Shown here: positions 16,641 through 28,680 of the stretch, piece by piece
Position numbering within the stretch: the first letter of the stretch is position 1
Layout of the letters: the number at the start of each line of letters is the position of its first letter
IMG/VR virus record: IMGVR_UViG_3300009370_001221
Span: 1 to 64,000 of that record
Strand: one strand, 5' to 3'
Length of the DNA: 64,000 nucleotides
The notes under the pieces: generated by a model
Database searches by the model: none
Told to the model about the DNA's origin: nothing
What the model saw: only the letters and a program-made list of their open reading frames with translations
Program-made: the position numbers and the translations under genes

Positions 16641-17306
16641 TACTGCTGTAAATTATCCACTATTATTTCATATTAGCTTGTTCATTTTCTAAAACTATTG
16701 GATTACCATCTTTATCGGTTTTAGCGTACATAATATAAAGACTTAATCTTTTATAATTACATTTGGGAACCGAATGAACAATTCTTGGTTCAAGATAATT
16801 ATGATTAATATAACCCCTATTTAAACCATATTTTATTATTTTGTCTGAACCATCCATTTTAAATATAGTTCCAAAATTATCATTATCATTTAAATAAATT
16901 TGTATTGCAAGATGAACTTTATAATTATCAACATGATTACTCATAGAGAATCCTGGTTCATCCTTCCACAAAAAGGCATTATTAATAATAACAGGGTGAT
17001 CAACTGCGGTTTTTATAACAGAATCACAAAATTTCTCAATATCTTGTTTAACATCTAAATCCCAAAGATCTAATTTTTTACGAATACCACTCGCAACAGA
17101 ATAATTTATATCCACAAATTCATTATTGTTTGCAATCGATAAGATTTTATCAAGAATTTCTTGAGGAAAGAAATCTTTTACTTCAGTAACACGCATAAAT
17201 CGTCCTCCATTATTAATAAAATGGTAGTCGATTATGATTAATATATAGCTATGTTACCGCCATGTCAATATTTAACGTAATACTGCTATAAGTTATCCAC
17301 TATTAT
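16641..17306. repeat. 26-bp direct repeat pair (16641-16666, 17281-17306) flanking one gene
   Basis: TACTGCTGTAAATTATCCACTATTAT vs TACTGCTATAAGTTATCCACTATTAT, 2 mismatches. Confidence 0.8.
16663..17196 (-). CDS. 2OG-Fe(II) oxygenase
   Basis: HVD...IYLN...HSV...RLS motif set; GGAGG RBS. Confidence 0.75.
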   Translation of the reverse strand: MRVTEVKDFFPQEILDKILSIANNNEFVDINYSVASGIRKKLDLWDLDVKQDIEKFCDSVIKTAVDHPVIINNAFLWKDEPGFSMSNHVDNYKVHLAIQIYLNDNDNFGTIFKMDGSDKIIKYGLNRGYINHNYLEPRIVHSVPKCNYKRLSLYIMYAKTDKDGNPIVLENEQANMK

Positions 17307-17323
17307 AAATAGAACTTTACAGG

Positions 17324-17905
17324 TTGCTACCTAAATTGAATAACTTTTTCATTGACCCTGATATTTGCTTTGACGTGAGCAAATTACAGGATGCATTGCG
17401 CGAAGTTGATTCGCGAGTCGCAAGACAATCTCCTTTAGGCAAAAGAGACATCAATGCTATTTGTCTGACACAAATTCCCGGTGATCCAAACTCTATCACA
17501 GGTGGTAATGTAAGAGGATTATTTTGGACACGCCCAACAAGCAGTGGTGAAGAGGTCCAACGAGAAAATCCAATAGACGAATCCCAATATACTGAGTTTG
17601 TTAAACTATTTGAAGATACTTACTTCAAAGAAGTATACGATACACTTATTCCCAATTATAAATTAGGCAGAGTAAGATTGCTTTGGAAAATGCCACGCAC
17701 AACATTGAGTTGGCACAGGGATCCTGAACGCAGATTACACATACCTATCGTAACCAACCCAGGCGCACTAATGATTATTGATGATGAAGTAAAACATATG
17801 CCCGCAGATGGCAAAGTATGGATTACTGATAATACAAAATATCATAATGCGTTTAACGGAGGCGAGGAAGATCGCGTCCATTTAGTTGCTACAGTTATAG
17901 AATAA
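17324..17905 (+). CDS. Asp/Asn beta-hydroxylase-like oxygenase
   Basis: WHRD, RLHIPIVTN and HNAFNGGEEDRVHLV. Confidence 0.8.
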   Translation: MLPKLNNFFIDPDICFDVSKLQDALREVDSRVARQSPLGKRDINAICLTQIPGDPNSITGGNVRGLFWTRPTSSGEEVQRENPIDESQYTEFVKLFEDTYFKEVYDTLIPNYKLGRVRLLWKMPRTTLSWHRDPERRLHIPIVTNPGALMIIDDEVKHMPADGKVWITDNTKYHNAFNGGEEDRVHLVATVIE

Positions 17906-17936
17906 GGAAAGGCCCTAAACGGGCCCTTCCAAAAAA
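17906..17936. terminator. GC hairpin between the convergent oxygenase and tmRNA units
   Basis: GGAAAGGCCC-TAAAC-GGGCCCTTCC followed by A6. Confidence 0.55.
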
Positions 17937-18114
17937 GCAGATTGGGTAACAAGGTATGCTCTATACCCCGGAATACTGCCGTGATTAAGCGGCTAATGCG
18001 TATTCGTAATAATCGTCGTTTGCAATTATTTTAGTTTGCTGTTTTTTAACATGGAACTGCTCCCATGTGTCGTCCGTATATCGTCCTCACCCTGTCGAAG
18101 CCATGTCACCCCCG

Positions 18115-18258
18115 TCAAAAAAAGATTAAGTATACTATACCACCAATAATAATTATGTCGGCACAGATACTCCATGCGACATATATTTTAAACATATATT
18201 CTATAGCTTTCCTGAAAGGCCTTGGTAATGTTTTTATCTTGTTCCGGAGGAATCGCAT
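18115..18258 (-). CDS. 47-aa basic/transmembrane peptide inside the tmRNA intervening segment
   Basis: AGGAGG-8nt-ATG; MRFLRNKIKTLPRPFRKAIEYMFKIYVAWSICADIIIIGGIVYLIFF*; stop codon ends 1 nt before tmRNA G1. Confidence 0.65.
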   Translation of the reverse strand: MRFLRNKIKTLPRPFRKAIEYMFKIYVAWSICADIIIIGGIVYLIFF

Positions 18259-18292
18259 CGTCGCTTCCTCCTATCAATGTATTATAGTTCAT
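18188..18292 (-). CDS. Possible 34-aa ORF in the tmRNA intervening segment
   Basis: AAGGAGA RBS right after CCA; MNYNTLIGGSDDAIPPEQDKNITKAFQESYRIYV*; overlaps the 47-aa ORF out of frame. Confidence 0.35.
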   Translation of the reverse strand: MNYNTLIGGSDDAIPPEQDKNITKAFQESYRIYV

Positions 18293-18372
18293 TTTAATCT
18301 CCTTTTGGTGGAGGTGGTGGGGATCGAACCCACGTCCAGAATGCATATTGTCTACATCATACGACAATAAAG

Positions 18373-18546
18373 TTACTTACTTATTTTCTTTTCTTCATAT
18401 AAAACATGTTTGCGTACAACTGGGTCATACTTTTTTAATTTAAGTTTATTGCCACCCATCTTTCTTTTATTAACGGTTGTGGTATAATAATGCCCGGTAC
18501 CAGCAGTTGATACTAATTTAATAATTGTAATATTTTTACTTGCCAT
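18373..18546 (-). CDS. rpmG: 50S ribosomal protein bL33 (zinc-independent form)
   Basis: Hand translation: [57 protein letters not shown], with IKLVSxAGTGHxYTT and [10 protein letters not shown] signatures; TAATG overlap with the upstream gene; absent from ORF track (57 aa). Confidence 0.95.
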
Positions 18547-18890
18547 TACCATGCATCCTTAAATTGTGGTTTAGCGAAATTATCATTTTCTATAACATGT
18601 TCTTTTACTTCTTCTTTATCACCATAAGATATATTTTGCGGTGGCACATCTACAGAACTTCCTGTAGTATAAAATCTTGATGCTGTTTGTACATCATCAA
18701 AACTTTGTGATTTTTGTCCCATTGCTTTATCGAAAATGTCTTTATAGTCATTATAAATTTCCATATAGCTAGAAGGACCATATTTTTTCTCGGCCTCATC
18801 TGTGACAAACTTAACATACTCTGATGCTAAAGTCAAATCACCACCTGCTAATTTAAGACATTCTAATCTTATATGTGTTGAATCAATCAT
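18546..18890 (-). CDS. Hypothetical protein
   Basis: [10 protein letters not shown]-terminal motif; translationally coupled on both sides. Confidence 0.6.
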
Positions 18891-19048
18891 TCTTCGCCTT
18901 TAAATAGTGTCCATGCACCATAAATTATTGCGCCCCAGGCCGCCCACTTAACCAGTGGTGAAAATAAGAGGCATACTACACCAACAGCGACTAATACGCC
19001 GCCATCCCATGATGATCTTTCTGCCCATCGTGCTTTTAAATAGTCCAT
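18887..19048 (-). CDS. 53-aa two-helix membrane protein
   Basis: AGGAGA RBS; [53 protein letters not shown]; ATGA overlap; not in ORF track. Confidence 0.7.
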   Translation of the reverse strand: MDYLKARWAERSSWDGGVLVAVGVVCLLFSPLVKWAAWGAIIYGAWTLFKGEE

Positions 19049-19083
19049 ATTGTTATTCTCCTATGGTTTATATTTATAAAATA

Positions 19084-19386
19084 TTAATTATCTGCTTCTA
19101 TTTTTACTTGTAACGGGTAATTATTGTTACGAGATAGTACAGTGGTTTCAATACCTTTTTGTTCTGCTATTTCATACGGCAATACTGCTACTATAGCAAA
19201 CCCTTCTTGATGTATTTTATGTGTCAAATCTTGTGCGGCATCAATGGCATGCATAAAAATAGACATTAAACAATTTACAACAAAATCCATTGGTGTAACA
19301 TCATCATTAATAAAAACTACCTTATACAAAGGTGGTTCTTTTAACTTTAAATTTTCTTCTATTTTAGTTGCAGTATCTGACATCAT
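19084..19386 (-). CDS. clpS: ATP-dependent Clp protease adaptor ClpS
   Basis: PPLYKVVFINDDVTPMDFVV...IHQEG...YEIAEQK...YPLQ. Confidence 0.95.
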   Translation of the reverse strand: MMSDTATKIEENLKLKEPPLYKVVFINDDVTPMDFVVNCLMSIFMHAIDAAQDLTHKIHQEGFAIVAVLPYEIAEQKGIETTVLSRNNNYPLQVKIEADN

Positions 19387-20033
19387 TGTTGCTCATAATT
19401 CTTTTTTGGCCCTTCCATTAAGTCACGTAAATTATATACTATAAATTTTCCTGGATTACGTTGCCCTGCTCGTCCTTTATGTTTAGCGGCTCTCTTCCAT
19501 TCTAAGACCATTGGATTACCTTGTTCTCGTGCTTCTTTTGCTTGCTTTAACTTTTTCTGCAATTTTTTAGTATACGGTAATTTATATAATCGAGTATCTG
19601 TTTTACCTAAATGTTTAACCCATAATTCAATAACTTTACCTTGTCTTTGGCCGTCCATTACAATTACTTTTCCAACAGGAATCGTAGGATAAGCATACCC
19701 TAGAACGTCATTTAACTTATCCATTGTACTATATAATAAGAAAAAAAGCAAGGGAATTGTTAAGAATTTGATGTAAAGTTTCGCAGGAGTACGTATTAAT
19801 ATATAACTAACAAGAATAATTAACAACACCGCAGTAATAAACTCAATATTAAACGCATATAGTATATCATACCAAGCATTCCATTCAAGTTTCTCATCAC
19901 CTGCTATTGTGGAAAAATCTATTGCTTTTTCTTGTGCTGTTGCCATAATATTTGCCTCTGCATTGTTTTGATGATGACTTGCGTCTGTAATGTTTTGAGT
20001 TTCTTGTTGTTCATCAATCATCAATATCCCCAT
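19383..20033 (-). CDS. Membrane protein, third gene of the MotA/ExbB-like cassette
   Basis: Two TM helices then GYAYP...IELWV...RLYKLPYTKKL; start uncertain. Confidence 0.55.
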   Translation of the reverse strand: MGILMIDEQQETQNITDASHHQNNAEANIMATAQEKAIDFSTIAGDEKLEWNAWYDILYAFNIEFITAVLLIILVSYILIRTPAKLYIKFLTIPLLFFLLYSTMDKLNDVLGYAYPTIPVGKVIVMDGQRQGKVIELWVKHLGKTDTRLYKLPYTKKLQKKLKQAKEAREQGNPMVLEWKRAAKHKGRAGQRNPGKFIVYNLRDLMEGPKKNYEQQ

Positions 20034-20845
20034 AAGTGTAAAAATTCTTCTTTAATACCAGCAAAATTGCCAGCAGGATCAGGGGGCACTGGTGACTCAG
20101 GTGTTTGGTCTCCATGTGTACGTTCAATTAAATTTCCGTCAGGGCCTTCATGATATGTTGATTGCCACCTTTGGTCATATACAAATGGTGTCATATATGT
20201 ATTAACATCTGTTATATGATAAATCTTTTCTTCAGTTAGTTCTCCACCTTTTCGTTTAGTATATGTTTCTTCTACTACAGTAAAATTAAACGCTGTTTTT
20301 TCTTGCCCTGGTTTAACCAAATCAAATTTAATTAAACCTTTAGATTTATATGGATTAATTCTAATTAATTCCACTGTGACAGGTGCAGTTATTTCTTCTT
20401 GTGGTACATCTGCAGTAGAGCCTTGCCTATACGCATAATAATGAATATTAACAGTCCATTCGCCTGGAAGGAAACCACGTATTGTAACAATCTCTTGATT
20501 CATATCACTTGTTACATAACGACCATCTGCTAATTGAACAGTGTCATTACTAGTACCTAGATCATCTCGATCCAAATGCATCAGTCCTCTATCCCTGCCT
20601 CTAAAACTAACAATTTGTCCTAATGGATCTCTAACCCACATGTCAATATCTTTAGACGATCCTTCAGGCCAAGTTAATATGAGCAATATCTCTGCCTTTG
20701 GATCTATTTTTTTATCTGTGGGGACAGGAGGTGCTATAAGCAAGAATGCTATAACAAAAAGGAACACAAAACCGATTAAAGTATTAAACAATAAATCAGT
20801 AAATCCTAATCCTGATAGATATCTGTTACGCTTTCCTGTGGTCAT
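20021..20845 (-). CDS. MotB/ExbD-like TM helix plus periplasmic beta domain protein
   Basis: FTDLLFN TM helix with a conserved Asp; LTWP...DIDMWVRDP...LDRDDLG...NIHYY. Confidence 0.6.
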   Translation of the reverse strand: MTTGKRNRYLSGLGFTDLLFNTLIGFVFLFVIAFLLIAPPVPTDKKIDPKAEILLILTWPEGSSKDIDMWVRDPLGQIVSFRGRDRGLMHLDRDDLGTSNDTVQLADGRYVTSDMNQEIVTIRGFLPGEWTVNIHYYAYRQGSTADVPQEEITAPVTVELIRINPYKSKGLIKFDLVKPGQEKTAFNFTVVEETYTKRKGGELTEEKIYHITDVNTYMTPFVYDQRWQSTYHEGPDGNLIERTHGDQTPESPVPPDPAGNFAGIKEEFLHLWGY

Positions 20846-21296
20846 ATTCTAAGTTCATCAATTGTAATTTGGTAATAATTGAGCACACAAGGCCTACCAA
20901 TGTAGTTGTTAACGCGGTACTCATTCCCGCGGCCATATCTCGTATAACTTCCTTGGCTTGTCCTATATTAGTTAAATCTAAGTCAGCAAAAGCGCCACCT
21001 AGCATTATGATAAAACCTGTTACTGTACCAATTAACCCCAAAGTTATCATTGATTCAGCAAAGAACCATGATACTTCTATTGTGCGGAAATTTAAAGGTC
21101 GGCTTTTATAGAGTTTGTATGATTGATGTCCTAAATGGGCAGTTAAACCATAAAACAGTATTAATATACCAAAGCTTATCTTGGTTTGGTCTAAATGCCA
21201 GAGGGTGACCCACATATCGAAATAATGTACTACTGCCGTTGAGGCAAGTACAGCACATGTTATTAGCCACCACTTGAGAAAGCAATTTGATCGCAT
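20826..21296 (-). CDS. MotA/TolQ/ExbB proton channel family protein
   Basis: LGLIGTVTGFI...GMSTALTTTLVGL. Confidence 0.88.
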   Translation of the reverse strand: MRSNCFLKWWLITCAVLASTAVVHYFDMWVTLWHLDQTKISFGILILFYGLTAHLGHQSYKLYKSRPLNFRTIEVSWFFAESMITLGLIGTVTGFIIMLGGAFADLDLTNIGQAKEVIRDMAAGMSTALTTTLVGLVCSIITKLQLMNLEYDHRKA

Positions 21297-21347
21297 TCGT
21301 CGCTCCTAATCCGTCTTCAGTATTTAGCGCAATCTATAAATATTGGA

Positions 21348-22427
21348 ATGAATCCAAATCATAAATTCTTCTGCATAGAACCATATGTTAGTATGTCAAT
21401 AACAGAACCTGGCAAGGTATTTTGTTGTTGTTTACATGAAGGAGGTAAAGTAACTACTCCTGACGATGTATGGAATGATCCTTACCTTAAAGATATTAGA
21501 GCAAAATTTGACCGGGGAGAAATACCAGAAGAATGTGAAGGTTGCGTCGAAAACGAAAAACATAGTGACGGACGCTCGAGTAGAAGACTAGACGTTAACA
21601 GAAATTGGTTAAAACTACATAATAATTATGAAGATTACATCGATTCTGATGCTCCATATAGATTTGATTTTTGGGTAGGTAATTTATGTAATTTAGCATG
21701 TAATACATGTACATCTTATTATAGTTCAACATGGAATACGTTACTACAAAGACCGGCTGGCCATGATAGAAATCACAGAAACAGCATTGATATAAAAGAA
21801 TGGAAACCTATTACTGAAGATCCTCCAAACATTGATTATAAAAATTTAGAATGGATACATTTTAATGGTGGAGAACCATTACTCACAGCTACTCATCTTA
21901 AAACTTTAGAAAAAATACCAAAAGAACAACGAAGTTCAGTACGAGTAGAATATAATACTAATGGTACAGTAAAAGTAGATACTAATAGTGAAAAATACAA
22001 AATCTTTAAAGAATTTAGATCAGTTACCATGACATACAGCATAGATGGCATAGATGATGTTTTTGAAGAAATTCGTTGGCCGGCAAAATGGAATAAAGTA
22101 AGAGATAATATAGATAATTGGGTTGATCAAGTATGTGCAACTAAAGTAAGTGACAATTGGTTTTTTATGATAGGATTCAATTTAACAAAATCAGCATATA
22201 ATTACGATTCAATTAATGAAACAATAGACTACATCAAAGAAAGATGGACTGAACCTGTAAAAAATTATCTCATTCCGGAATACAAAAATTGGAACTATTA
22301 TGATATGATATTCTTATGCAACGATCACAGATCTATGAATTTTACCGATAAAGATTTTGAAGAATTTACACAAACCAAAGAGTTCATACGTGAAAAAGAG
22401 TTAATTGATCGGTTAAGAAAACGATAA
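21348..22427 (+). CDS. Radical SAM protein with N-terminal SPASM/twitch-like domain
   Basis: CNLACNTC (CxxxCxxC), GGEPLL, YNTNGT and SIDG; extra N-terminal Cys cluster. Confidence 0.88.
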   Translation: MNPNHKFFCIEPYVSMSITEPGKVFCCCLHEGGKVTTPDDVWNDPYLKDIRAKFDRGEIPEECEGCVENEKHSDGRSSRRLDVNRNWLKLHNNYEDYIDSDAPYRFDFWVGNLCNLACNTCTSYYSSTWNTLLQRPAGHDRNHRNSIDIKEWKPITEDPPNIDYKNLEWIHFNGGEPLLTATHLKTLEKIPKEQRSSVRVEYNTNGTVKVDTNSEKYKIFKEFRSVTMTYSIDGIDDVFEEIRWPAKWNKVRDNIDNWVDQVCATKVSDNWFFMIGFNLTKSAYNYDSINETIDYIKERWTEPVKNYLIPEYKNWNYYDMIFLCNDHRSMNFTDKDFEEFTQTKEFIREKELIDRLRKR

Positions 22428-22526: not shown

Positions 22527-22958
22527 ATGACTGAGTATAGAATCACTGCGGGAAATCTTATCCCCACACTTAACCGACACATGGTCGGATTCGATCGCTT
22601 ATTTGGCGATATGGACAGGCTTTTTACACATCAAGCACCGTCCTACCCACCCTACAATATTGAACGCATCAGCGACTCTGAGTATGTAATTACCATTGCC
22701 GTTGCTGGGTTTTCTCAGGGTGATCTTTCAGTAACTGTTGATAATGGACAATTGACTGTCGCTGGTCACAAAGAGGACTCAGACGAACAGAATTGGCTAC
22801 ACAAGGGCATCGCAACACGCGACTTCAGACGCTCTTGGAACTTGGCAGAATATGTCGAAGTTGTATCGGCAGTATGCAAGGACGGAATGTTAAAGGTTAG
22901 TCTTAAACAGGAAGTACCTGAAGCACTGAAGCCAAAGGAGATCGAAATTAAGTTCTAA
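22527..22958 (+). CDS. ibpA: Small heat shock protein Hsp20 (IbpA-like)
   Basis: GFDRLF, SYPPYNI, AVAGF, HKGIATRDF and DGML. Confidence 0.95.
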   Translation: MTEYRITAGNLIPTLNRHMVGFDRLFGDMDRLFTHQAPSYPPYNIERISDSEYVITIAVAGFSQGDLSVTVDNGQLTVAGHKEDSDEQNWLHKGIATRDFRRSWNLAEYVEVVSAVCKDGMLKVSLKQEVPEALKPKEIEIKF

Positions 22959-23020: not shown

Positions 23021-23341
23021 TTAATATTTTCGTTTACGATGGATGGAATTTTCAGCAACTTCTTTTAAATGTCGCTTACGGGCAATGTCTTTAGCACGTT
23101 TTCTTGCAATACTAGGTTTTTCATATTGTTCACGAGCTTTTAAATCTTGTAATTTACCGGAATTGGCTACTTTCTTTTTAAATTTGCGTAAGGCTTTATC
23201 CACATCACCATTTTGCACCCAAACTTTAAGTCCAGATATTTTTACTGGACTAACTTTATAATCTATTGGTTTTCTATAAGGTTTCTTTCCACCTCTATTT
23301 TTATCCCAACTTGTATTTTTATTATTCCAATCCCGTGCCAT
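23021..23341 (-). CDS. rpsU: 30S ribosomal protein bS21 with N-terminal extension
   Basis: VQNGDVDKALRKFKKKV...REQYEKPSIARKR. Confidence 0.92.
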   Translation of the reverse strand: MARDWNNKNTSWDKNRGGKKPYRKPIDYKVSPVKISGLKVWVQNGDVDKALRKFKKKVANSGKLQDLKAREQYEKPSIARKRAKDIARKRHLKEVAENSIHRKRKY

Positions 23342-25758: not shown

Positions 25759-25845
25759 TGGCTCCGGGGGTTGGGATCGAACCAACATTGCCCATTGGGC
25801 ACCCTATAAACGGTAGGGCCTGTATACCTATTCCAGCACCCCGGA
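25759..25845 (-). tRNA. Atypical tRNA, anticodon GUU (Asn), long variable arm, encoded CCA
   Basis: TCCGGGG/CCCCGGA acceptor, G73, CCA; D arm CTG-GAATAGGTATA-CAG; anticodon arm CCCTA-CCGTTTA-TAGGG; variable arm TGCCC-AAT-GGGCA; T arm GTTGG-TTCGATC-CCAAC; 87 nt. Confidence 0.9.
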
Positions 25846-25852
25846 TCATTTT

Positions 25853-26710
25853 TTATCGGTGCATATTTGCTACTATACCACGCAACTTATATTGTTCCAT
25901 CGCATGAATAAAACGTGTCATGCCTATTCCACCACCTACTCTTGGAATAAAATCTAATTGTAAAAAGTCATCTAGTTCTTTTGTTACACGATCTTTACCA
26001 AATGTTCCAAACAATAAATCTGCATACATACCATCACTAATTGTATGAAACATTTCTCGCATTTCAGTAGTGTCACTACTGCGCTCTGCTGAACCAATAG
26101 TTTCCATGCCCGCTATAATTACATCAATTTTTGCGGCCGTTCCGTCACCATTTTGTTTCATGTTCCAAAAAGGACTTGTGTAATTAGGGAAGTTTTTAAT
26201 CATGCAAACTCTACCTTGCCAATTCTTACACATTGCGTCTTCGTGCTCATGCTCGAGTTCTTGAACACCAAAATCCTCGCACCATGCAAGATAATCCTTT
26301 GCAACAACTCCACCCTTAGAACACCAACCTAAGTATTCCATAAGTTCTTTTTCCATTTTTTCTAAATCATTCATGTCACCTGGCATTTCAAATTCAAACA
26401 TTGGGAAAATTAAATCATGTCTACCTTCTACAACATTAGGTTCTTGCCTATAGGATGTTGAAACACAAAAAAACCCCGGGACATGGGGTTTAGTTAAAAG
26501 CTCGTACTCGAGCCACATTTGGCCAGTTTGTGGAAGTGGCCAAACTTCTCCGGCATAGTTATATGTTGCTACAGTTGTTGGATCTTCACACGCGGCTAAT
26601 ATTGATAATCTATTTTGAGTATGTACCTCTTCAAATCCTTTAGCCATAAAAAAAGACCTTAATAGGCCTGTGGCTTCAGTAAACTGTTGAGGGTTAATTA
26701 ATTGCGTCAT
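25853..26710 (-). CDS. Class IIb aminoacyl-tRNA synthetase catalytic-core protein (AsnRS/AspRS-like, no anticodon-binding domain)
   Basis: Motif 1-like LRSFFMAKGFEEVHT, LPQTGQMWLE, motif 2 SYRQEP...RHDLIFPMFEFE, ETIGSAER, motif 3 GGGIGMTR; 285 aa from the GGAG-preceded ATG at 26710. Confidence 0.85.
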   Translation of the reverse strand: MTQLINPQQFTEATGLLRSFFMAKGFEEVHTQNRLSILAACEDPTTVATYNYAGEVWPLPQTGQMWLEYELLTKPHVPGFFCVSTSYRQEPNVVEGRHDLIFPMFEFEMPGDMNDLEKMEKELMEYLGWCSKGGVVAKDYLAWCEDFGVQELEHEHEDAMCKNWQGRVCMIKNFPNYTSPFWNMKQNGDGTAAKIDVIIAGMETIGSAERSSDTTEMREMFHTISDGMYADLLFGTFGKDRVTKELDDFLQLDFIPRVGGGIGMTRFIHAMEQYKLRGIVANMHR

Positions 26711-26839
26711 TCTTATTCTCCAGTCAAATTTTTTTAGGCGCAAGACAAGCCGCCTAAACTGTTTTTATTTATACCTTTTCTTTATTATAGTACAATTAAG
26801 TCAAGTTATTATTATATCAGAAACCACTTTAAATATTAT

Positions 26840-27205: not shown

Positions 27206-27760
27206 TTAATCTTCGTCTTGAAACTCTGCAGGATTTTCTTTATCATAATCCCACTTCATTTTATCTTTATCTAATTTTTTTATTGCTCGTTTTTTATATG
27301 CATCAAGTACACCAAGTTCTTTAGCACGAACAATAATTGCTTTTGCTATTTCTACTTCTTGTCTTGATGGTGGATTTGTTTTTGACCTGCCATTAAATGA
27401 CATTAATACATTTGCTATGTCATCATCCAATTGGCCAGGCACATCACGTAGCATATGTAATGCTATTGCCATATCACCTGCTTCGGCAGCTATTAAATTT
27501 GTACTTGTACCAACACCAAACTCGGCTGTTTTAATTCTTGACAACATATCATCATGACTAGATTGTCGAGCCGCTTGTTGTTTTTCTGCCTGGTAATCAG
27601 CAAAATCAGGAAAAGCCGTTACTAAACGATCAAGTTCTTTTTGTAATTTAGCAGGCGCCTTGCCAGTTTTTTCTTTAGCAATCTCTATTTCTTGATTGAG
27701 TTTTTCAATCTTTTTAGCAAGGCGATCTTTATTCTCAAGTATTACTTCATTAATTTTCAT
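27206..27760 (-). CDS. Hypothetical protein, possible internal head protein
   Basis: MKINEVILE N-terminal motif. Confidence 0.55.
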   Translation of the reverse strand: MKINEVILENKDRLAKKIEKLNQEIEIAKEKTGKAPAKLQKELDRLVTAFPDFADYQAEKQQAARQSSHDDMLSRIKTAEFGVGTSTNLIAAEAGDMAIALHMLRDVPGQLDDDIANVLMSFNGRSKTNPPSRQEVEIAKAIIVRAKELGVLDAYKKRAIKKLDKDKMKWDYDKENPAEFQDED

Positions 27761-28680
27761 TACTTATTAACGTTATCTTGATCAAATGCTTTAGGTTGTG
27801 TTGCATTTTTCTTCATCCACTTCAGTAAATTCGGCTTTGCTGTTTTAGTATTGCCTTTATTATACCATTCTGGACTATCATCACCTCTTTTTGGTGTGCC
27901 GCGGCCGATCAAGTTCCGGCCGCCGCCGATATCGCCACCGATAGGTTTTTCCATCTGTTGTCGGATCTTATCTAGCCAGTTCTGATCCATCGTCCCAGAG
28001 CCAATGCGTGTCGGCCGTTGTAAAATTCCTGGAGGAGGAGTGTTAGGCATTGCTTGTTTTCTATCCAACCCAGCATTCTTCATCATACTGTCCAATTGAT
28101 TTTGAAGTCCTGGACGAACGCCTTGTGCTGGTTTTGGTGTTGCATAACCTGGTGGAGGTGTGTTTGGACCACTTGCCACTTGTGTACCTGGTGGAGGAGT
28201 ATTTGGTAACTCCGCTACCTTTGTTCCTGGTGGAGGAGTATTTGGTAAATTACTTGGTTTTGGTGTTGCATAATTTCTACCTGGAGGGCCACTTGCTCCT
28301 GTACCTGCGGCTACTTGTTTAGGGGCATATCGTCCTGCTGGGCCATCTGCACCCGTGCCTGCGGCTACCTGTCTTGGTGCATAATTCCTTCCTGGAGGGC
28401 CACTTGCTCCTGTGCCTGCGGCTACCTGTCTTGGTGCATAATTCCTTCCTGGAGGGCCACTTGCTCCTGTGCCAGCGGCTGGTACCCTTGTCGGTGTCAT
28501 AATGCCAGCGGCGCCCATATTGCCGCCGCTTGGTCCTTCAGCGTCATGCTTAGGATCAAATTCACCACCACTTTGAAGATCTGGATCACCACCACCCAAT
28601 GCGGCTTTCTCGGCGCGCAATGCGGCAATTTGCTTATCAATTTCTTCAGCTCTACCTTCTAAAATTTGCTTAATTTTCAT
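27760..28680 (-). CDS. Gly/Pro-rich repeat protein, possible internal head protein
   Basis: MKIKQILEG N-terminus; four AAGTGASGPPGRNYAPRQV-like units and four PNTPPPG units. Confidence 0.65.
   Translation of the reverse strand: MKIKQILEGRAEEIDKQIAALRAEKAALGGGDPDLQSGGEFDPKHDAEGPSGGNMGAAGIMTPTRVPAAGTGASGPPGRNYAPRQVAAGTGASGPPGRNYAPRQVAAGTGADGPAGRYAPKQVAAGTGASGPPGRNYATPKPSNLPNTPPPGTKVAELPNTPPPGTQVASGPNTPPPGYATPKPAQGVRPGLQNQLDSMMKNAGLDRKQAMPNTPPPGILQRPTRIGSGTMDQNWLDKIRQQMEKPIGGDIGGGRNLIGRGTPKRGDDSPEWYNKGNTKTAKPNLLKWMKKNATQPKAFDQDNVNK
28260..28480 (-). repeat. About four coding tandem repeats (unit about 57 bp)
   Basis: CCTGGAGGGCCACTTGCTCCTGT..GCGGCTAC..G core repeated. Confidence 0.85.

What the first reader, a model, noticed from the sequence alone, without database searches (positions are those of the whole stretch)
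18373..18546. Unannotated ribosomal protein bL33 directly upstream of the tmRNA
Seen: a 57-aa bL33 below the ORF-track cutoff, lacking Zn-binding Cys, translationally coupled to the upstream gene and ending a few nt before the tmRNA acceptor piece. Established: bS21 is the commonest phage ribosomal protein and bL33 is less often reported; bL33 sits near the E site. Inference: one transcript delivers both a 50S protein and the rescue RNA.
Basis: partly seen in the sequence, partly recalled or inferred. Interest (0 to 1): 0.6.

Follow-up and report, generated by a model that had tools for sequence, protein, structure and literature searches.

The report
Phage bL33 gene fused to tmRNA
A large marine phage carries a real ribosomal protein bL33 gene that runs, with only six bases between, into a two-piece ribosome-rescue RNA (tmRNA) gene, and that RNA gene also hides a small membrane-protein gene in the part that is cut out.

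Summary
On the minus strand, 18546..18373 encodes a 57-aa, cysteine-free bL33 (TIGR01023 70 bits; Pfam 54 bits). Its ATG overlaps the stop of the upstream 114-aa ORF (TAATG). Its stop lies 6 nt before a permuted (two-piece) tmRNA gene (RF04321, 120 bits; tag ANDDYYEYALAA).

The window is the start of a 235-kb IMG/VR phage record. The string ClpS, 53-aa ORF, 114-aa ORF, bL33, tmRNA recurs in at least nine diverged phage lineages. Their bL33 genes form one clade under purifying selection (dN/dS 0.07-0.35).

No terminator separates the genes. A poly(A)-tailed metatranscriptome contig from a ~97% identical relative runs from the 114-aa ORF through bL33 and the acceptor piece, ending at the CCA. 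Co-transcription is therefore supported, though not proven for single molecules.

Phage bL33 and phage two-piece tmRNAs are each already published. The fusion into one unit is new.

An unexpected extra: the 192-nt intervening segment of the tmRNA gene holds a conserved 47-aa membrane-protein ORF (18258..18115). In 65 of 80 related viral loci its homologue sits in the same nested position, its stop usually 1 nt before the coding piece. I found no report of this in the papers searched.

The parts
18373..18546 (-). rpmG: ribosomal protein bL33, 57 aa, cysteine-free (C-minus) form
   Evidence: Pfam 54.4 bits. TIGR01023 70.1 bits. PDB bL33 chains 62 bits. dN/dS 0.07-0.35 among 8 phage orthologues.
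18546..18890 (-). 114-aa ORF of unknown function. Its stop overlaps the bL33 start (TAATG).
   Evidence: It is conserved upstream of bL33 in all relatives. Only 19 database relatives, no Pfam or PHROG family. RNA contig 18610..18789.
18887..19048 (-). 53-aa hydrophobic small ORF, first gene after the TATAAATA motif
   Evidence: Syntenic 55-59-aa ORFs occur in relatives. An RNA contig covers 18894..19218.
19071..19078 (-). TATAAATA motif 22 nt before the 53-aa ORF start; candidate promoter of the 53aa-114aa-bL33-tmRNA unit (inferred)
   Evidence: It is conserved in L013, L016, L019 and L027 amid variable flanks, and absent in L006 and L035. Other copies lie just upstream of start codons.
19084..19386 (-). 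ClpS-like Clp protease adaptor, 100 aa
   Evidence: Pfam ClpS 85.3 bits against a cut-off of 23. phrog_27368. Below the NCBIfam equivalog cut-offs.
18306..18366 (-). tmRNA acceptor piece: 5' strand of the long helix, T arm, 3' acceptor strand, encoded CCA ending at 18306
   Evidence: RF04321 alignment. RNA contig 18369..18169. Poly(A) tail at 18306-18303 in the X17 contig.
18114..18305 (-). 192-nt intervening segment of the permuted tmRNA gene (9-10 nt in relatives L006, L022 and L035)
   Evidence: It is present in RNA contigs contiguous with either piece: 18369..18169 and 18231..17966.
18188..18292 (-). ORF A, 34 aa, directly after the CCA with an AAGGAG ribosome-binding site. It stays open but is poorly conserved; possibly a leader ORF.
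18115..18258 (-). ORF B, 47 aa, with a basic N-terminus and a C-terminal transmembrane helix. Its stop lies 1 nt before the first base of the coding piece. Its ribosome-binding site and AUG sit in a hairpin.
   Evidence: Family of 168 viral stretches and 155 proteins. pN/pS 0.21 and codon-position entropy 3>1>2. 65 of 80 loci are nested in a tmRNA gene. Hairpins. Hydropathy.
17903..18113 (-). tmRNA coding piece: 5' acceptor strand from G at 18113, tag frame 18023..17985 (ANDDYYEYALAA, stop), 3' helices
   Evidence: RNA contigs 18113..17967 (depth 20) and 18231..17966.
17906..17930 (-). Terminator-like hairpin (10 pairs, 7 G-C, then a T-rich tail) that ends the minus-strand unit. The plus-strand Asp/Arg-hydroxylase-like gene (17324..17905) converges on it.

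Best explanation
The window belongs to a large marine phage: a 235-kb record, about two thirds complete. The phage carries a block of translation and protein-quality-control genes. Within this block a tightly packed minus-strand gene string reads: MotA/ExbB-like, two unknown genes, ClpS, a 53-aa ORF, a 114-aa ORF, bL33. The string runs without a terminator into a circularly permuted tmRNA gene and ends at a hairpin terminator at 17930..17906.

Shown: bL33 is a genuine gene under purifying selection. It was acquired once by the ancestor of this phage clade from a gammaproteobacterial-type source. Its start overlaps the stop of the gene before it. The tmRNA has all sequence hallmarks of a working alanine-accepting two-piece tmRNA. 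RNA covering the bL33/tmRNA junction exists in the sea.

Inferred: RNA polymerase reads through bL33 into the tmRNA gene, probably starting from the conserved TATAAATA motif at 19078 and from further upstream. The precursor is then cut at the CCA end of the acceptor piece and at the first G of the coding piece, by the host's tRNA-processing enzymes. One primary transcript thus yields bL33 mRNA, both tmRNA pieces, and a short released segment that is itself an mRNA for a 47-aa membrane protein.

Also inferred: the phage bL33 (with phage bS21 at 23021..23341) enters host ribosomes as an exchangeable surface protein. The phage tmRNA works with host SmpB to free stalled ribosomes and tag their products. 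ClpS adjusts which substrates the host Clp proteases take.
For: Identity of bL33. Selection and single origin: dN/dS 0.07-0.35. The eight phage bL33 form one clade (SH-aLRT 98) among gammaproteobacterial-type sequences.

Identity of the tmRNA: RF04321 at 119.7 bits against 47, and RF01850 at 99.6 against 84. The acceptor strands GGGGGUG and CACCUCC give a G3-U70 pair. CCA is encoded. The tag ends in ALAA. The T stem and acceptor position 6 change in a compensating way across phage tmRNAs (sequence lists).

Phage context: the source is a virus record, with ribonucleotide reductase, baseplate-like protein and helicases nearby.

Conserved arrangement: bL33 is followed by a tmRNA on the same strand at 5, 6 or 9 nt (window, L013, L015, L016, L019, L026), 53 nt (L035), about 80 nt (L033), 115 nt (L022) or 732 nt (L006/L023). 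None of the 80 nearest bacterial rpmG loci has a tmRNA within 1.5 kb.

Co-transcription: there is no terminator between about 21300 and 17930, and no promoter-like site inside bL33. The X17 poly(A)-tailed RNA contig covers 18717..18303. Other RNA contigs join the intervening segment to each piece. The coding-piece contig ends within 4 nt of the predicted first G at 18113.
Against: The RNA evidence comes from assembled contigs, which cannot prove single molecules. The key contig comes from a ~97% identical relative, not the window's own strain.

One RNA contig begins at 18369, exactly at the bL33/tmRNA boundary. That could mark either a processing site or a transcription start.

In L033 and L035 a 12-13-bp hairpin and a TATAAATA-like motif lie between bL33 and the tmRNA. 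In more distant phages the tmRNA has its own TTGACA-17-TATAAATA promoter. So separate transcription is the likely ancestral state and cannot be excluded here.

No SmpB gene was found in the 235 kb held. The TATAAATA motif is not enriched over chance in the window as a whole, and no T4-type late-transcription factor was found. Nothing tests whether the protein enters ribosomes.
Confidence: 0.8

Rival explanations
1. The adjacency is only genome compaction. The tmRNA is made from its own weak promoter inside the 3' part of bL33, or right at the boundary. Read-through RNA from bL33 is then a by-product that does not feed tmRNA production.
For: More distant phage tmRNAs have their own strong promoter directly upstream of the acceptor piece. 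L033 and L035 keep a hairpin plus a TATAAATA-like motif between the genes. An RNA contig starts at 18369, at the boundary.
Against: No promoter-like site was found on the minus strand inside bL33. The last 50 nt of bL33 differ among close relatives, with no conserved -10-like hexamer (sequence lists). The poly(A)-tailed contig was already cut at the CCA while still joined to bL33, so read-through RNA does enter 3' processing.
Confidence: 0.15
2. The phage bL33 does not act as a ribosomal protein. It acts as a small RNA-binding helper for the neighbouring tmRNA or its precursor, or as a decoy that alters host ribosome assembly.
For: The linkage to the tmRNA is conserved over deep divergence in this clade, and no such linkage occurs in bacteria. 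bL33 is dispensable in E. coli (cited in PMC6375957).
Against: The protein is full length and about 69% identical to bL33 in solved ribosomes. It passes the equivalog model well above threshold, with no extra domain or obvious change. The simplest reading is the ordinary role. No paper linking bL33 to tmRNA was found.
Confidence: 0.05
3. The bL33 and tmRNA are host DNA: an assembly chimera, or a recently captured fragment without a role in the phage.
For: The nearest cellular bL33 are 64-79% identical. The few bL33 hits among GenBank 'phage' records look like bacterial contigs.
Against: The same gene string occurs in many independent assemblies from different samples and studies, flanked by phage genes. 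G+C of bL33 is 29%, below the phage's 36%. The phage bL33 form their own clade under purifying selection. No bacterial rpmG locus has this arrangement.
Confidence: 0.01

Closest known systems
Virus-encoded bL33 in aquatic viral contigs (Mizuno et al. 2019, PMC6375957)
   Same: A bacterial-type bL33 gene on uncultivated aquatic phage contigs. The paper reports it in more than 10 contigs, almost only aquatic, with at least two independent host-to-virus transfers. It argues that exchangeable surface proteins (bS21, bL12, bL9, bL31, bL33) are the ones phages carry. The window's phage also has bS21.
   Different: That paper's main text does not mention tmRNA at all (0 occurrences). Here bL33 is the last coding gene of a unit that continues into a tmRNA gene, and RNA evidence covers the junction.
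Two-piece tmRNA of marine phages, e.g. Methylophilales phage Melnitz and pelagimyophages (Buchholz et al. 2022, PMC9004378)
   Same: A circularly permuted ssrA in marine phages; 53 of 133 distinct phage tmRNAs were two-piece, and 50 of those marine or aquatic. The window's tmRNA shares with the alpha-type phage tmRNAs the AAGGAGAU motif right after the CCA and the nested small ORF.
   Different: In Melnitz the tmRNA follows its own early promoter, is not next to bL33, and has a glutamine riboswitch 3' of the gene. Its 142-nt intervening segment has no intact ORF B. Rfam found no riboswitch in the window's segment.
Bacterial rpmB-rpmG (bL28-bL33) arrangement and C-plus/C-minus bL33 paralogues
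   Same: The protein is an ordinary cysteine-free bL33 of the type found in E. coli-like ribosomes.
   Different: No tmRNA lies next to rpmG in the 80 nearest bacterial loci. No bL28 partner was seen next to the phage gene; the neighbour is a clade-specific 114-aa protein. That rpmB-rpmG is the usual bacterial arrangement is from my own knowledge.
Cargo inside tmRNA genes (tmRNA database update 2025, PMC11915505)
   Same: Permuted tmRNA genes whose intervening sequence holds something extra are on record: one with a tRNA-Ala gene and one with a repetitive element. Group I introns occur in the T loop of other tmRNA genes.
   Different: That survey, which held only 79 phage sequences, does not mention a protein-coding gene in the intervening sequence. 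Here a conserved ORF under purifying selection sits there in at least 65 viral loci.
Huge phages carrying tmRNAs and ribosomal proteins (Al-Shayeb et al. 2020, PMC7162821)
   Same: A phage of more than 200 kb with several translation-related genes, including tmRNA and ribosomal proteins.
   Different: The term L33 does not occur in that paper. No physical fusion of a ribosomal protein gene with a tmRNA gene is described in the papers I could search.

Membership tests
Ribosomal protein bL33 (PF00471 / TIGR01023) | Profile score above the curated cut-offs over the full length | tested here: met
   PF00471: 54.4 bits against 25, profile positions 2-47 of 47. TIGR01023 equivalog: 70.1 against 23.95, positions 1-55 of 56. 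NF001860: 64.7 against 50.
Ribosomal protein bL33 (PF00471 / TIGR01023) | Close similarity to bL33 chains seen inside solved ribosomes | tested here: met
   41 PDB sequences at E<=1e-5. The best is 62.1 bits, about 33 of 48 aligned residues identical.
Ribosomal protein bL33 (PF00471 / TIGR01023) | Four zinc-binding cysteines (this defines the C-plus subclass only, not the family) | tested here: not met
   No Cys in the window protein or in 7 phage orthologues. It therefore belongs to the C-minus form, like its nearest gammaproteobacterial relatives.
Ribosomal protein bL33 (PF00471 / TIGR01023) | Physical presence in the 50S subunit | not testable with these tools
   Needs ribosome purification from cells expressing the phage protein.
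Permuted (two-piece) tmRNA (RF04321; RF01850/RF01849) | Covariance-model score above gathering threshold, with gene order acceptor piece, intervening segment, coding piece | tested here: met
   RF04321: 119.7 bits against 47, model 1-213 complete. RF01850: 99.6 against 84. Relatives score 79-122 bits.
Permuted (two-piece) tmRNA (RF04321; RF01850/RF01849) | Alanine-tRNA-like acceptor stem with a G3-U70 pair, a T arm and a 3' CCA | tested here: met
   Read from the sequence and the Rfam alignment. The U of CCUCC is kept in all 23 phage tmRNAs listed, and the T stem varies in a compensating way (one search lists).
Permuted (two-piece) tmRNA (RF04321; RF01850/RF01849) | Tag reading frame with an alanine resume codon, a hydrophobic C-terminal degradation signal and a stop codon | tested here: met
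   GCA resume codon and ANDDYYEYALAA followed by a stop codon at 18023..17985. Relatives carry close variants ending in ALAA or AMAA.
Permuted (two-piece) tmRNA (RF04321; RF01850/RF01849) | Processing of one precursor into two RNA pieces | tested here: inconclusive
   RNA contigs join the intervening segment to each piece, which shows that a precursor exists. One contig ends with a poly(A) tail at the CCA. One ends within 4 nt of the first G of the coding piece, at five-fold higher depth. Contigs cannot define ends rigorously.
Permuted (two-piece) tmRNA (RF04321; RF01850/RF01849) | SmpB partner protein available | tested here: not met
   No SmpB (PF01668) in the 235-kb phage record, which is about 67% complete. 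The host's SmpB would have to serve; this is inferred.
Single transcription unit rpmG-ssrA | No terminator or promoter between the genes, and RNA that spans the junction | tested here: met
   Scan. The X17 contig 18717..18303 spans 18373/18366, with 345 and 64 nt on the two sides. Single-molecule proof is lacking.

The most novel reading that the evidence does not exclude
The tmRNA precursor may be a dual-purpose transcript. The segment that tRNA-type processing removes between the two tmRNA pieces would itself be a small messenger RNA. It starts with a ribosome-binding site right after the CCA and carries a short leader ORF. It then carries a hairpin-masked start for a conserved ~47-aa membrane protein, and it ends 1 nt after that protein's stop codon, where RNase P would cut. 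This nested gene is a shared feature of a widespread lineage of marine-phage permuted tmRNAs. In the window's clade the same precursor also carries bL33. On any one molecule, translation of the nested gene and folding of the tmRNA would exclude each other, which gives the phage a built-in switch between the two products.
Probability: 0.45. Interest if true: 0.8.

Novelty: new variant of a known kind. Interest (0 to 1): 0.6.

Why it matters
Phage-borne ribosomal proteins and phage tmRNAs are usually reported as isolated curiosities. Here both sit in one conserved, expressed unit beside ClpS, with bS21, Hsp20, a tRNA and a synthetase-like gene nearby. That points to a coordinated phage programme for keeping host translation and protein turnover running during infection. 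It also gives a compact piece of DNA (about 1.3 kb, 19100..17880) with which that programme can be tested in the laboratory.

The nested small gene would be, as far as I could find, the first protein-coding gene described inside the excised part of a tmRNA gene. It matters for annotation, because gene callers either skip it or call a wrong longer frame across the acceptor piece. It also matters for understanding how two-piece tmRNAs are matured.

Tried and rejected
1. ARAGORN's second call, a one-piece tmRNA at 18306..18845, and both of its tag peptides are rejected. That call overlaps two real coding genes, and the Rfam alignment gives a canonical tag instead.

2. The idea that the long intervening segment holds a glutamine riboswitch, as reported near the Melnitz ssrA, is rejected. 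Rfam found none in the window at E<=1, nor in 20 related loci at the gathering threshold. In Melnitz the riboswitch lies 3' of the tmRNA.

3. L026's 684-nt tmRNA span contains a run of N (a scaffold gap) and was ignored.

4. Single-sequence nhmmer for the tmRNA pieces was too insensitive. I used sequence patterns instead, cross-checked by ARAGORN and Rfam.

5. My spliced tmRNA alignment was misregistered for four rows by a loose pattern. Its consensus fold is not used; only the printed stem sequences are.

6. The 11-mer of the tmRNA 3' end recurs at 28150..28160, but there it is part of a proline-rich coding repeat.

7. Structure prediction of the 114-aa upstream protein gave pLDDT 58.8: three N-terminal helices, the rest unconfident. 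No fold search was run on it.

8. The Atlas search for ORF B gave only unnamed clusters below 0.9. tblastn of ORF B against GenBank phages found nothing, and BLAST's low-complexity filter may be one reason.

9. tblastn with Melnitz late-transcription coactivator and helicase loader found nothing in the phage record. The T4-type reading of TATAAATA therefore stays an inference.

10. Host inference from bL33 resolves only to gammaproteobacterial-type. The tmRNA type is not informative for the host: it scores best with the beta model here and with the alpha model in L035, and it shares the nested ORF with alpha-type phage tmRNAs.

11. Complex prediction and the large representative protein search were not used, because no claim here rests on them.

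Full report
**What is at the coordinates.** The finding's interval is the coding sequence of a minus-strand ORF, 18546..18373 including the stop. The 57-aa product matches Ribosomal_L33 over the whole Pfam profile (54.4 bits, cut-off 25). It matches NCBI's rpmG equivalog model over positions 1-55 of 56 (70.1 bits, cut-off 23.95). It matches bL33 chains of solved bacterial ribosomes at 62 bits, about 69% identity over 48 residues. It has no cysteine. The stop codon of the upstream 114-aa ORF (18890..18546) shares its last A with the bL33 ATG (TAATG). The bL33 stop is at 18375..18373.

**The tmRNA.** Six bases further on, at 18366, begins a complete match to Rfam's permuted tmRNA model (RF04321, 18366..17985, 119.7 bits against a gathering score of 47). 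The betaproteobacterial two-piece model also matches (RF01850, 99.6 against 84). Reading that alignment against the sequence gives the following layout:
- The acceptor piece ends in an encoded CCA at 18306.
- The coding piece starts with G at 18113.
- Its 5' strand GGGGGUG pairs with CACCUCC, giving the G3-U70 pair that marks alanine acceptors.
- The tag frame is GCA...UAA at 18023..17985 and encodes ANDDYYEYALAA.

ARAGORN recognises a permuted tmRNA here, but both of its tag calls, and a second overlapping one-piece call, are wrong.

**Where it sits.** The window is the first 64 kb of a 235,363-bp IMG/VR virus record that CheckV rates 67% complete. The window holds ribonucleotide reductase, a baseplate-like structural protein and two helicases. 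Around bL33 lies a cluster of translation and protein-quality genes:
- ClpS at 19386..19084 (Pfam 85 bits).
- Hsp20 at 22527..22958 and a radical SAM protein at 21348..22427.
- bS21 at 23341..23021.
- tRNA-Asn at 25845..25759.
- Beside the tRNA, a 296-aa protein with only the catalytic core of a class II Asn/Asp-type synthetase.

No SmpB was found in the record. The minus-strand genes from 21296 down to bL33 overlap or nearly touch. The only sizeable gap is 35 nt between ClpS and the 53-aa ORF, and it holds a TATAAATA motif at 19078..19071.

**Relatives.** Searches with bL33 and with the 114-aa protein brought in viral and metagenome contigs with the same string: MotA/ExbB-like, two unknowns, ClpS, a small ORF, the 114-aa homologue, then bL33. 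In every one that extends far enough, a permuted tmRNA follows bL33 on the same strand:

| Gap between bL33 and tmRNA | Loci |
|---|---|
| 5, 6 or 9 nt | window, L013, L015, L016, L019, L026 |
| 53 nt | L035 |
| about 80 nt | L033 |
| 115 nt | L022 |
| 732 nt, with a 238-aa ORF inserted | L006, L023 |

The upstream protein falls to 32% identity across this set, so the linkage is old. A second, distant type of phage bL33 (47% identical; L007-L012) has no tmRNA within 4 kb. None of the 80 nearest bacterial rpmG loci has a tmRNA within 1.5 kb.

The eight phage bL33 genes show dN/dS of 0.07-0.35, with synonymous sites saturated between the deeper pairs. They form one clade (SH-aLRT 98) in an otherwise unresolved set of mostly gammaproteobacterial bL33. 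The G+C of bL33 is 29%, against 36% for the phage. This fits one old capture followed by vertical descent under selection. It does not identify the host more precisely than 'gammaproteobacterial-type source'.

**Is it one transcript?** The consensus scan finds no terminator-like site on the minus strand between about 21300 and the hairpin at 17930..17906. That hairpin closes the tmRNA gene. The scan also finds no promoter-like site inside bL33. The last 50 nt of bL33 vary among close relatives without a conserved -10-like element.

The TATAAATA upstream of the 53-aa ORF is conserved in L013, L016, L019 and L027 amid variable flanks. Other copies in the genome lie just before start codons. I take it as a candidate promoter. 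The motif is not enriched overall, and I found no T4-type late factors.

Public metatranscriptomes hold the region. Laid on 17300..21400, they give the following:
- A 433-nt contig from a poly(A)-selected library has 11 mismatches in 415 nt, so it comes from a close relative. It covers 18717..18303: part of the 114-aa ORF, all of bL33, the 6-nt gap and the whole acceptor piece. It is followed by 18 A that the genome does not encode. The tail begins at the CCA or within the three A after it.
- A contig at 18369..18169 joins the acceptor piece to the intervening segment.
- A contig at 18231..17966 joins the intervening segment to the coding piece.
- A contig at 18113..17967 covers the coding piece alone, at about five times the depth. 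Its upper end is within 4 nt of the predicted first G.
- Contigs over the 114-aa ORF, the 53-aa ORF and ClpS come from the study that also yielded the DNA.

The pattern looks like RNA rather than DNA carry-over: high depth on the tmRNA pieces only, and an untemplated tail. It shows that RNA crossing the bL33/tmRNA junction exists and that such RNA is cut at the CCA. Contigs cannot prove single molecules or exact ends. The recurring lower end at 17966/17967 may simply be a fork between strains.

In L033 and L035 a 12-13-bp hairpin (z about -3) and a TATAAATA-like motif lie between bL33 and the tmRNA. In distant phages the tmRNA has its own TTGACA-17-TATAAATA promoter. Separate transcription is therefore probably the older state, and the window's lineage has collapsed the spacer. 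I put co-transcription in the window's lineage at roughly 0.8.

**An unexpected gene inside the tmRNA gene.** In the window the segment between the CCA and the coding piece is 192 nt. In L006, L022 and L035 it is 9-10 nt. The long form starts with AAGGAGAU and an ATG (ORF A, 18292..18188, 34 aa). In another frame it holds a 47-aa ORF (ORF B, 18258..18115). ORF B's stop lies 1 nt before the first G of the coding piece.

Evidence that ORF B is a real coding gene:
- It aligns across the window's relatives with conservative replacements and in-frame length changes of 6 and 9 nt.
- A profile of it finds 168 stretches in viral contigs and 155 database proteins of 35-50 aa. These are almost all metagenomic, with no contig longer than 163 kb.
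- Over 42 distinct core sequences, pN/pS is 0.21, and variability follows the coding pattern: third codon position highest, then first, then second.
- Eleven of the 80 loci carry the ORF free-standing or beside, not inside, a tmRNA gene. So it is a gene in its own right.
- The protein has a basic N-terminal half and a hydrophobic C-terminal helix, and no known family.

Evidence that the nested position is conserved:
- In 65 of the 80 fetched viral loci the ORF lies between a tmRNA CCA end and a coding-piece start. The stop is exactly 1 nt before the GGGG in 56 of them.
- ARAGORN finds a permuted tmRNA around the ORF in 48 loci.
- Rfam finds one in 17 of the 20 loci sampled. In 16 of these it spans the ORF; in L140 the ORF lies just upstream of the tmRNA gene.

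In four diverged examples the ribosome-binding site and AUG of ORF B sit in a hairpin whose stem sequence differs between lineages. ORF A stays open but is poorly conserved, as expected of a leader ORF whose translation could open that hairpin. This last point is inference.

The family was not found in 401 sampled alphaproteobacterial genomes, whereas the same search finds it in the phage record. The cultured phage Melnitz has a 142-nt segment without an intact copy. The 2025 tmRNA database paper mentions only a tRNA-Ala gene and a repeat element inside intervening sequences. My literature searches found no report of a coding gene there.

**How it most likely works.** Shown: the identities of the parts, their conservation, selection on bL33 and ORF B, and the presence of junction-spanning and precursor RNA.

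Inferred: transcription from upstream promoters reads through bL33 into the tmRNA gene. Host RNase P would cut at the first G of the coding piece, and 3' tRNA-processing enzymes would cut at the CCA, as in bacterial two-piece tmRNAs (established for Caulobacter, Keiler et al. 2000, cited). The released middle segment, or the uncut precursor, is translated to give ORF B.

From general knowledge, bL33 and bS21 are loosely bound, exchangeable ribosomal proteins (also argued in PMC6375957). ClpS blocks ClpAP from degrading ssrA-tagged proteins and redirects it to N-degron and aggregated substrates (Dougan et al. 2002, recalled from memory, not checked). A plausible common purpose is to keep ribosomes supplied and unjammed, and to steer proteolysis, while host gene expression collapses. 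I found no published mechanistic link between bL33 and tmRNA, so the pairing may reflect shared timing rather than direct interaction.

**Comparison with what is known, and novelty.** Phage bL33 is already known from aquatic viral contigs (PMC6375957). Two-piece tmRNAs are known to be common among marine phage tmRNAs (PMC9004378). Huge phages are known to carry tmRNAs and ribosomal proteins (PMC7162821). PHROGs has no bL33 family. The only bL33 hits among 50,697 GenBank phage records look like bacterial sequence, so cultured examples are lacking.

Three things are new here. The first is the physical and transcriptional fusion of rpmG with ssrA, conserved in one phage clade and absent from the nearest bacterial loci. 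The second is its place in a ClpS-containing string. The third is the nested coding gene in the tmRNA's excised segment. I rate the finding as a new variant of known kinds, of moderate to good interest. The nested gene is the most surprising element.

**Limits.** RNA evidence is contig-level only. The structure prediction of the 114-aa partner protein was not confident. The promoter assignment is inferential.

Noticed in passing
window 18115-18258 (-), inside the tmRNA gene; L121-L200: A conserved 47-aa membrane-protein ORF lies in the intervening segment of the permuted tmRNA gene. Homologues occupy the same nested position in 65 of 80 viral loci, with the stop usually 1 nt before the coding piece. 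pN/pS is 0.21. Free-standing copies also exist (L125, L126, L128, L140). It was not found in 401 sampled alphaproteobacterial genomes.
   Followed up: yes
window 18188-18305 (-); L019 4239-4345; L033 599-705; L131 1148-1260: Right after the CCA comes a near-invariant AAGGAGAU and a short, poorly conserved ORF A. The ribosome-binding site and AUG of ORF B sit in a hairpin whose stem differs between lineages. This suggests leader-ORF coupling or a precursor-folding role. The GGAG could also pair with the CUCC of the acceptor strand.
   Followed up: partly
window 23021-23341 (-): A second ribosomal protein gene, bS21 (Pfam 57.5 bits, TIGR00030 60 bits). The longest frame is 106 aa, and the S21 domain starts at residue 40, so either there is an N-terminal extension or a later start is used.
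   Followed up: partly
window 25759-25845 (-) and 25853-26743 (-): tRNA-Asn lies directly downstream of a 296-aa protein that has only the catalytic core of a class II Asn/Asp-type synthetase or asparagine synthetase A (Pfam tRNA-synt_2 53 bits; phrog_29758 394 bits, function unknown).
   Followed up: partly
window 19071-19078 (-), 17304-17311 (+), 21335-21342 (+), 26766-26773 (-): TATAAATA motifs lie 5-25 nt upstream of start codons in the right orientation. The one before the 53-aa ORF is conserved in four relatives. This is a possible phage promoter element, although the motif is not enriched overall and no T4-type late factors were found.
   Followed up: partly
L006 4169-4885; L023 4184-4900; window 16663-17196 (-): In two relatives a 238-aa ORF is inserted between bL33 and the tmRNA. 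By eye it resembles the window's 177-aa ORF at 16663..17196, so this gene seems to have moved within the neighbourhood.
   Followed up: no
L035 3057-3255; L131, L141, L160 and others: Many phage permuted tmRNAs, including L035, have a T loop reading GGCAGUA/G or UGCAAUU instead of the usual GUUCGAU, while the T stem covaries.
   Followed up: no
L129 1507-1715; L140 1813-1987: A manA RNA motif (RF01745, 66-72 bits) lies just downstream of the tmRNA gene in two distant marine phage contigs.
   Followed up: no
window 27760-28680 (-): A 306-aa glycine/proline-rich protein with repeated PNTPPPG and AAGTGASGPPGRNYAP units. One repeat contains, by coincidence of coding for PPP, the same 11-mer as the tmRNA 3' end.
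   Followed up: partly
GenBank phage collection hits H8-H15: The only bL33 matches among 50,697 'phage' records are short unannotated records, Salmonella whole-genome contigs and similar. They look like bacterial sequence filed among phages rather than phage-borne bL33.
   Followed up: no
L019 4168-4350; L020 3309-3491: Automatic gene calls in public assemblies place a 60-aa ORF across the tmRNA acceptor piece and into the intervening segment. The tmRNA and the real small ORF are therefore mis-annotated there.
   Followed up: partly
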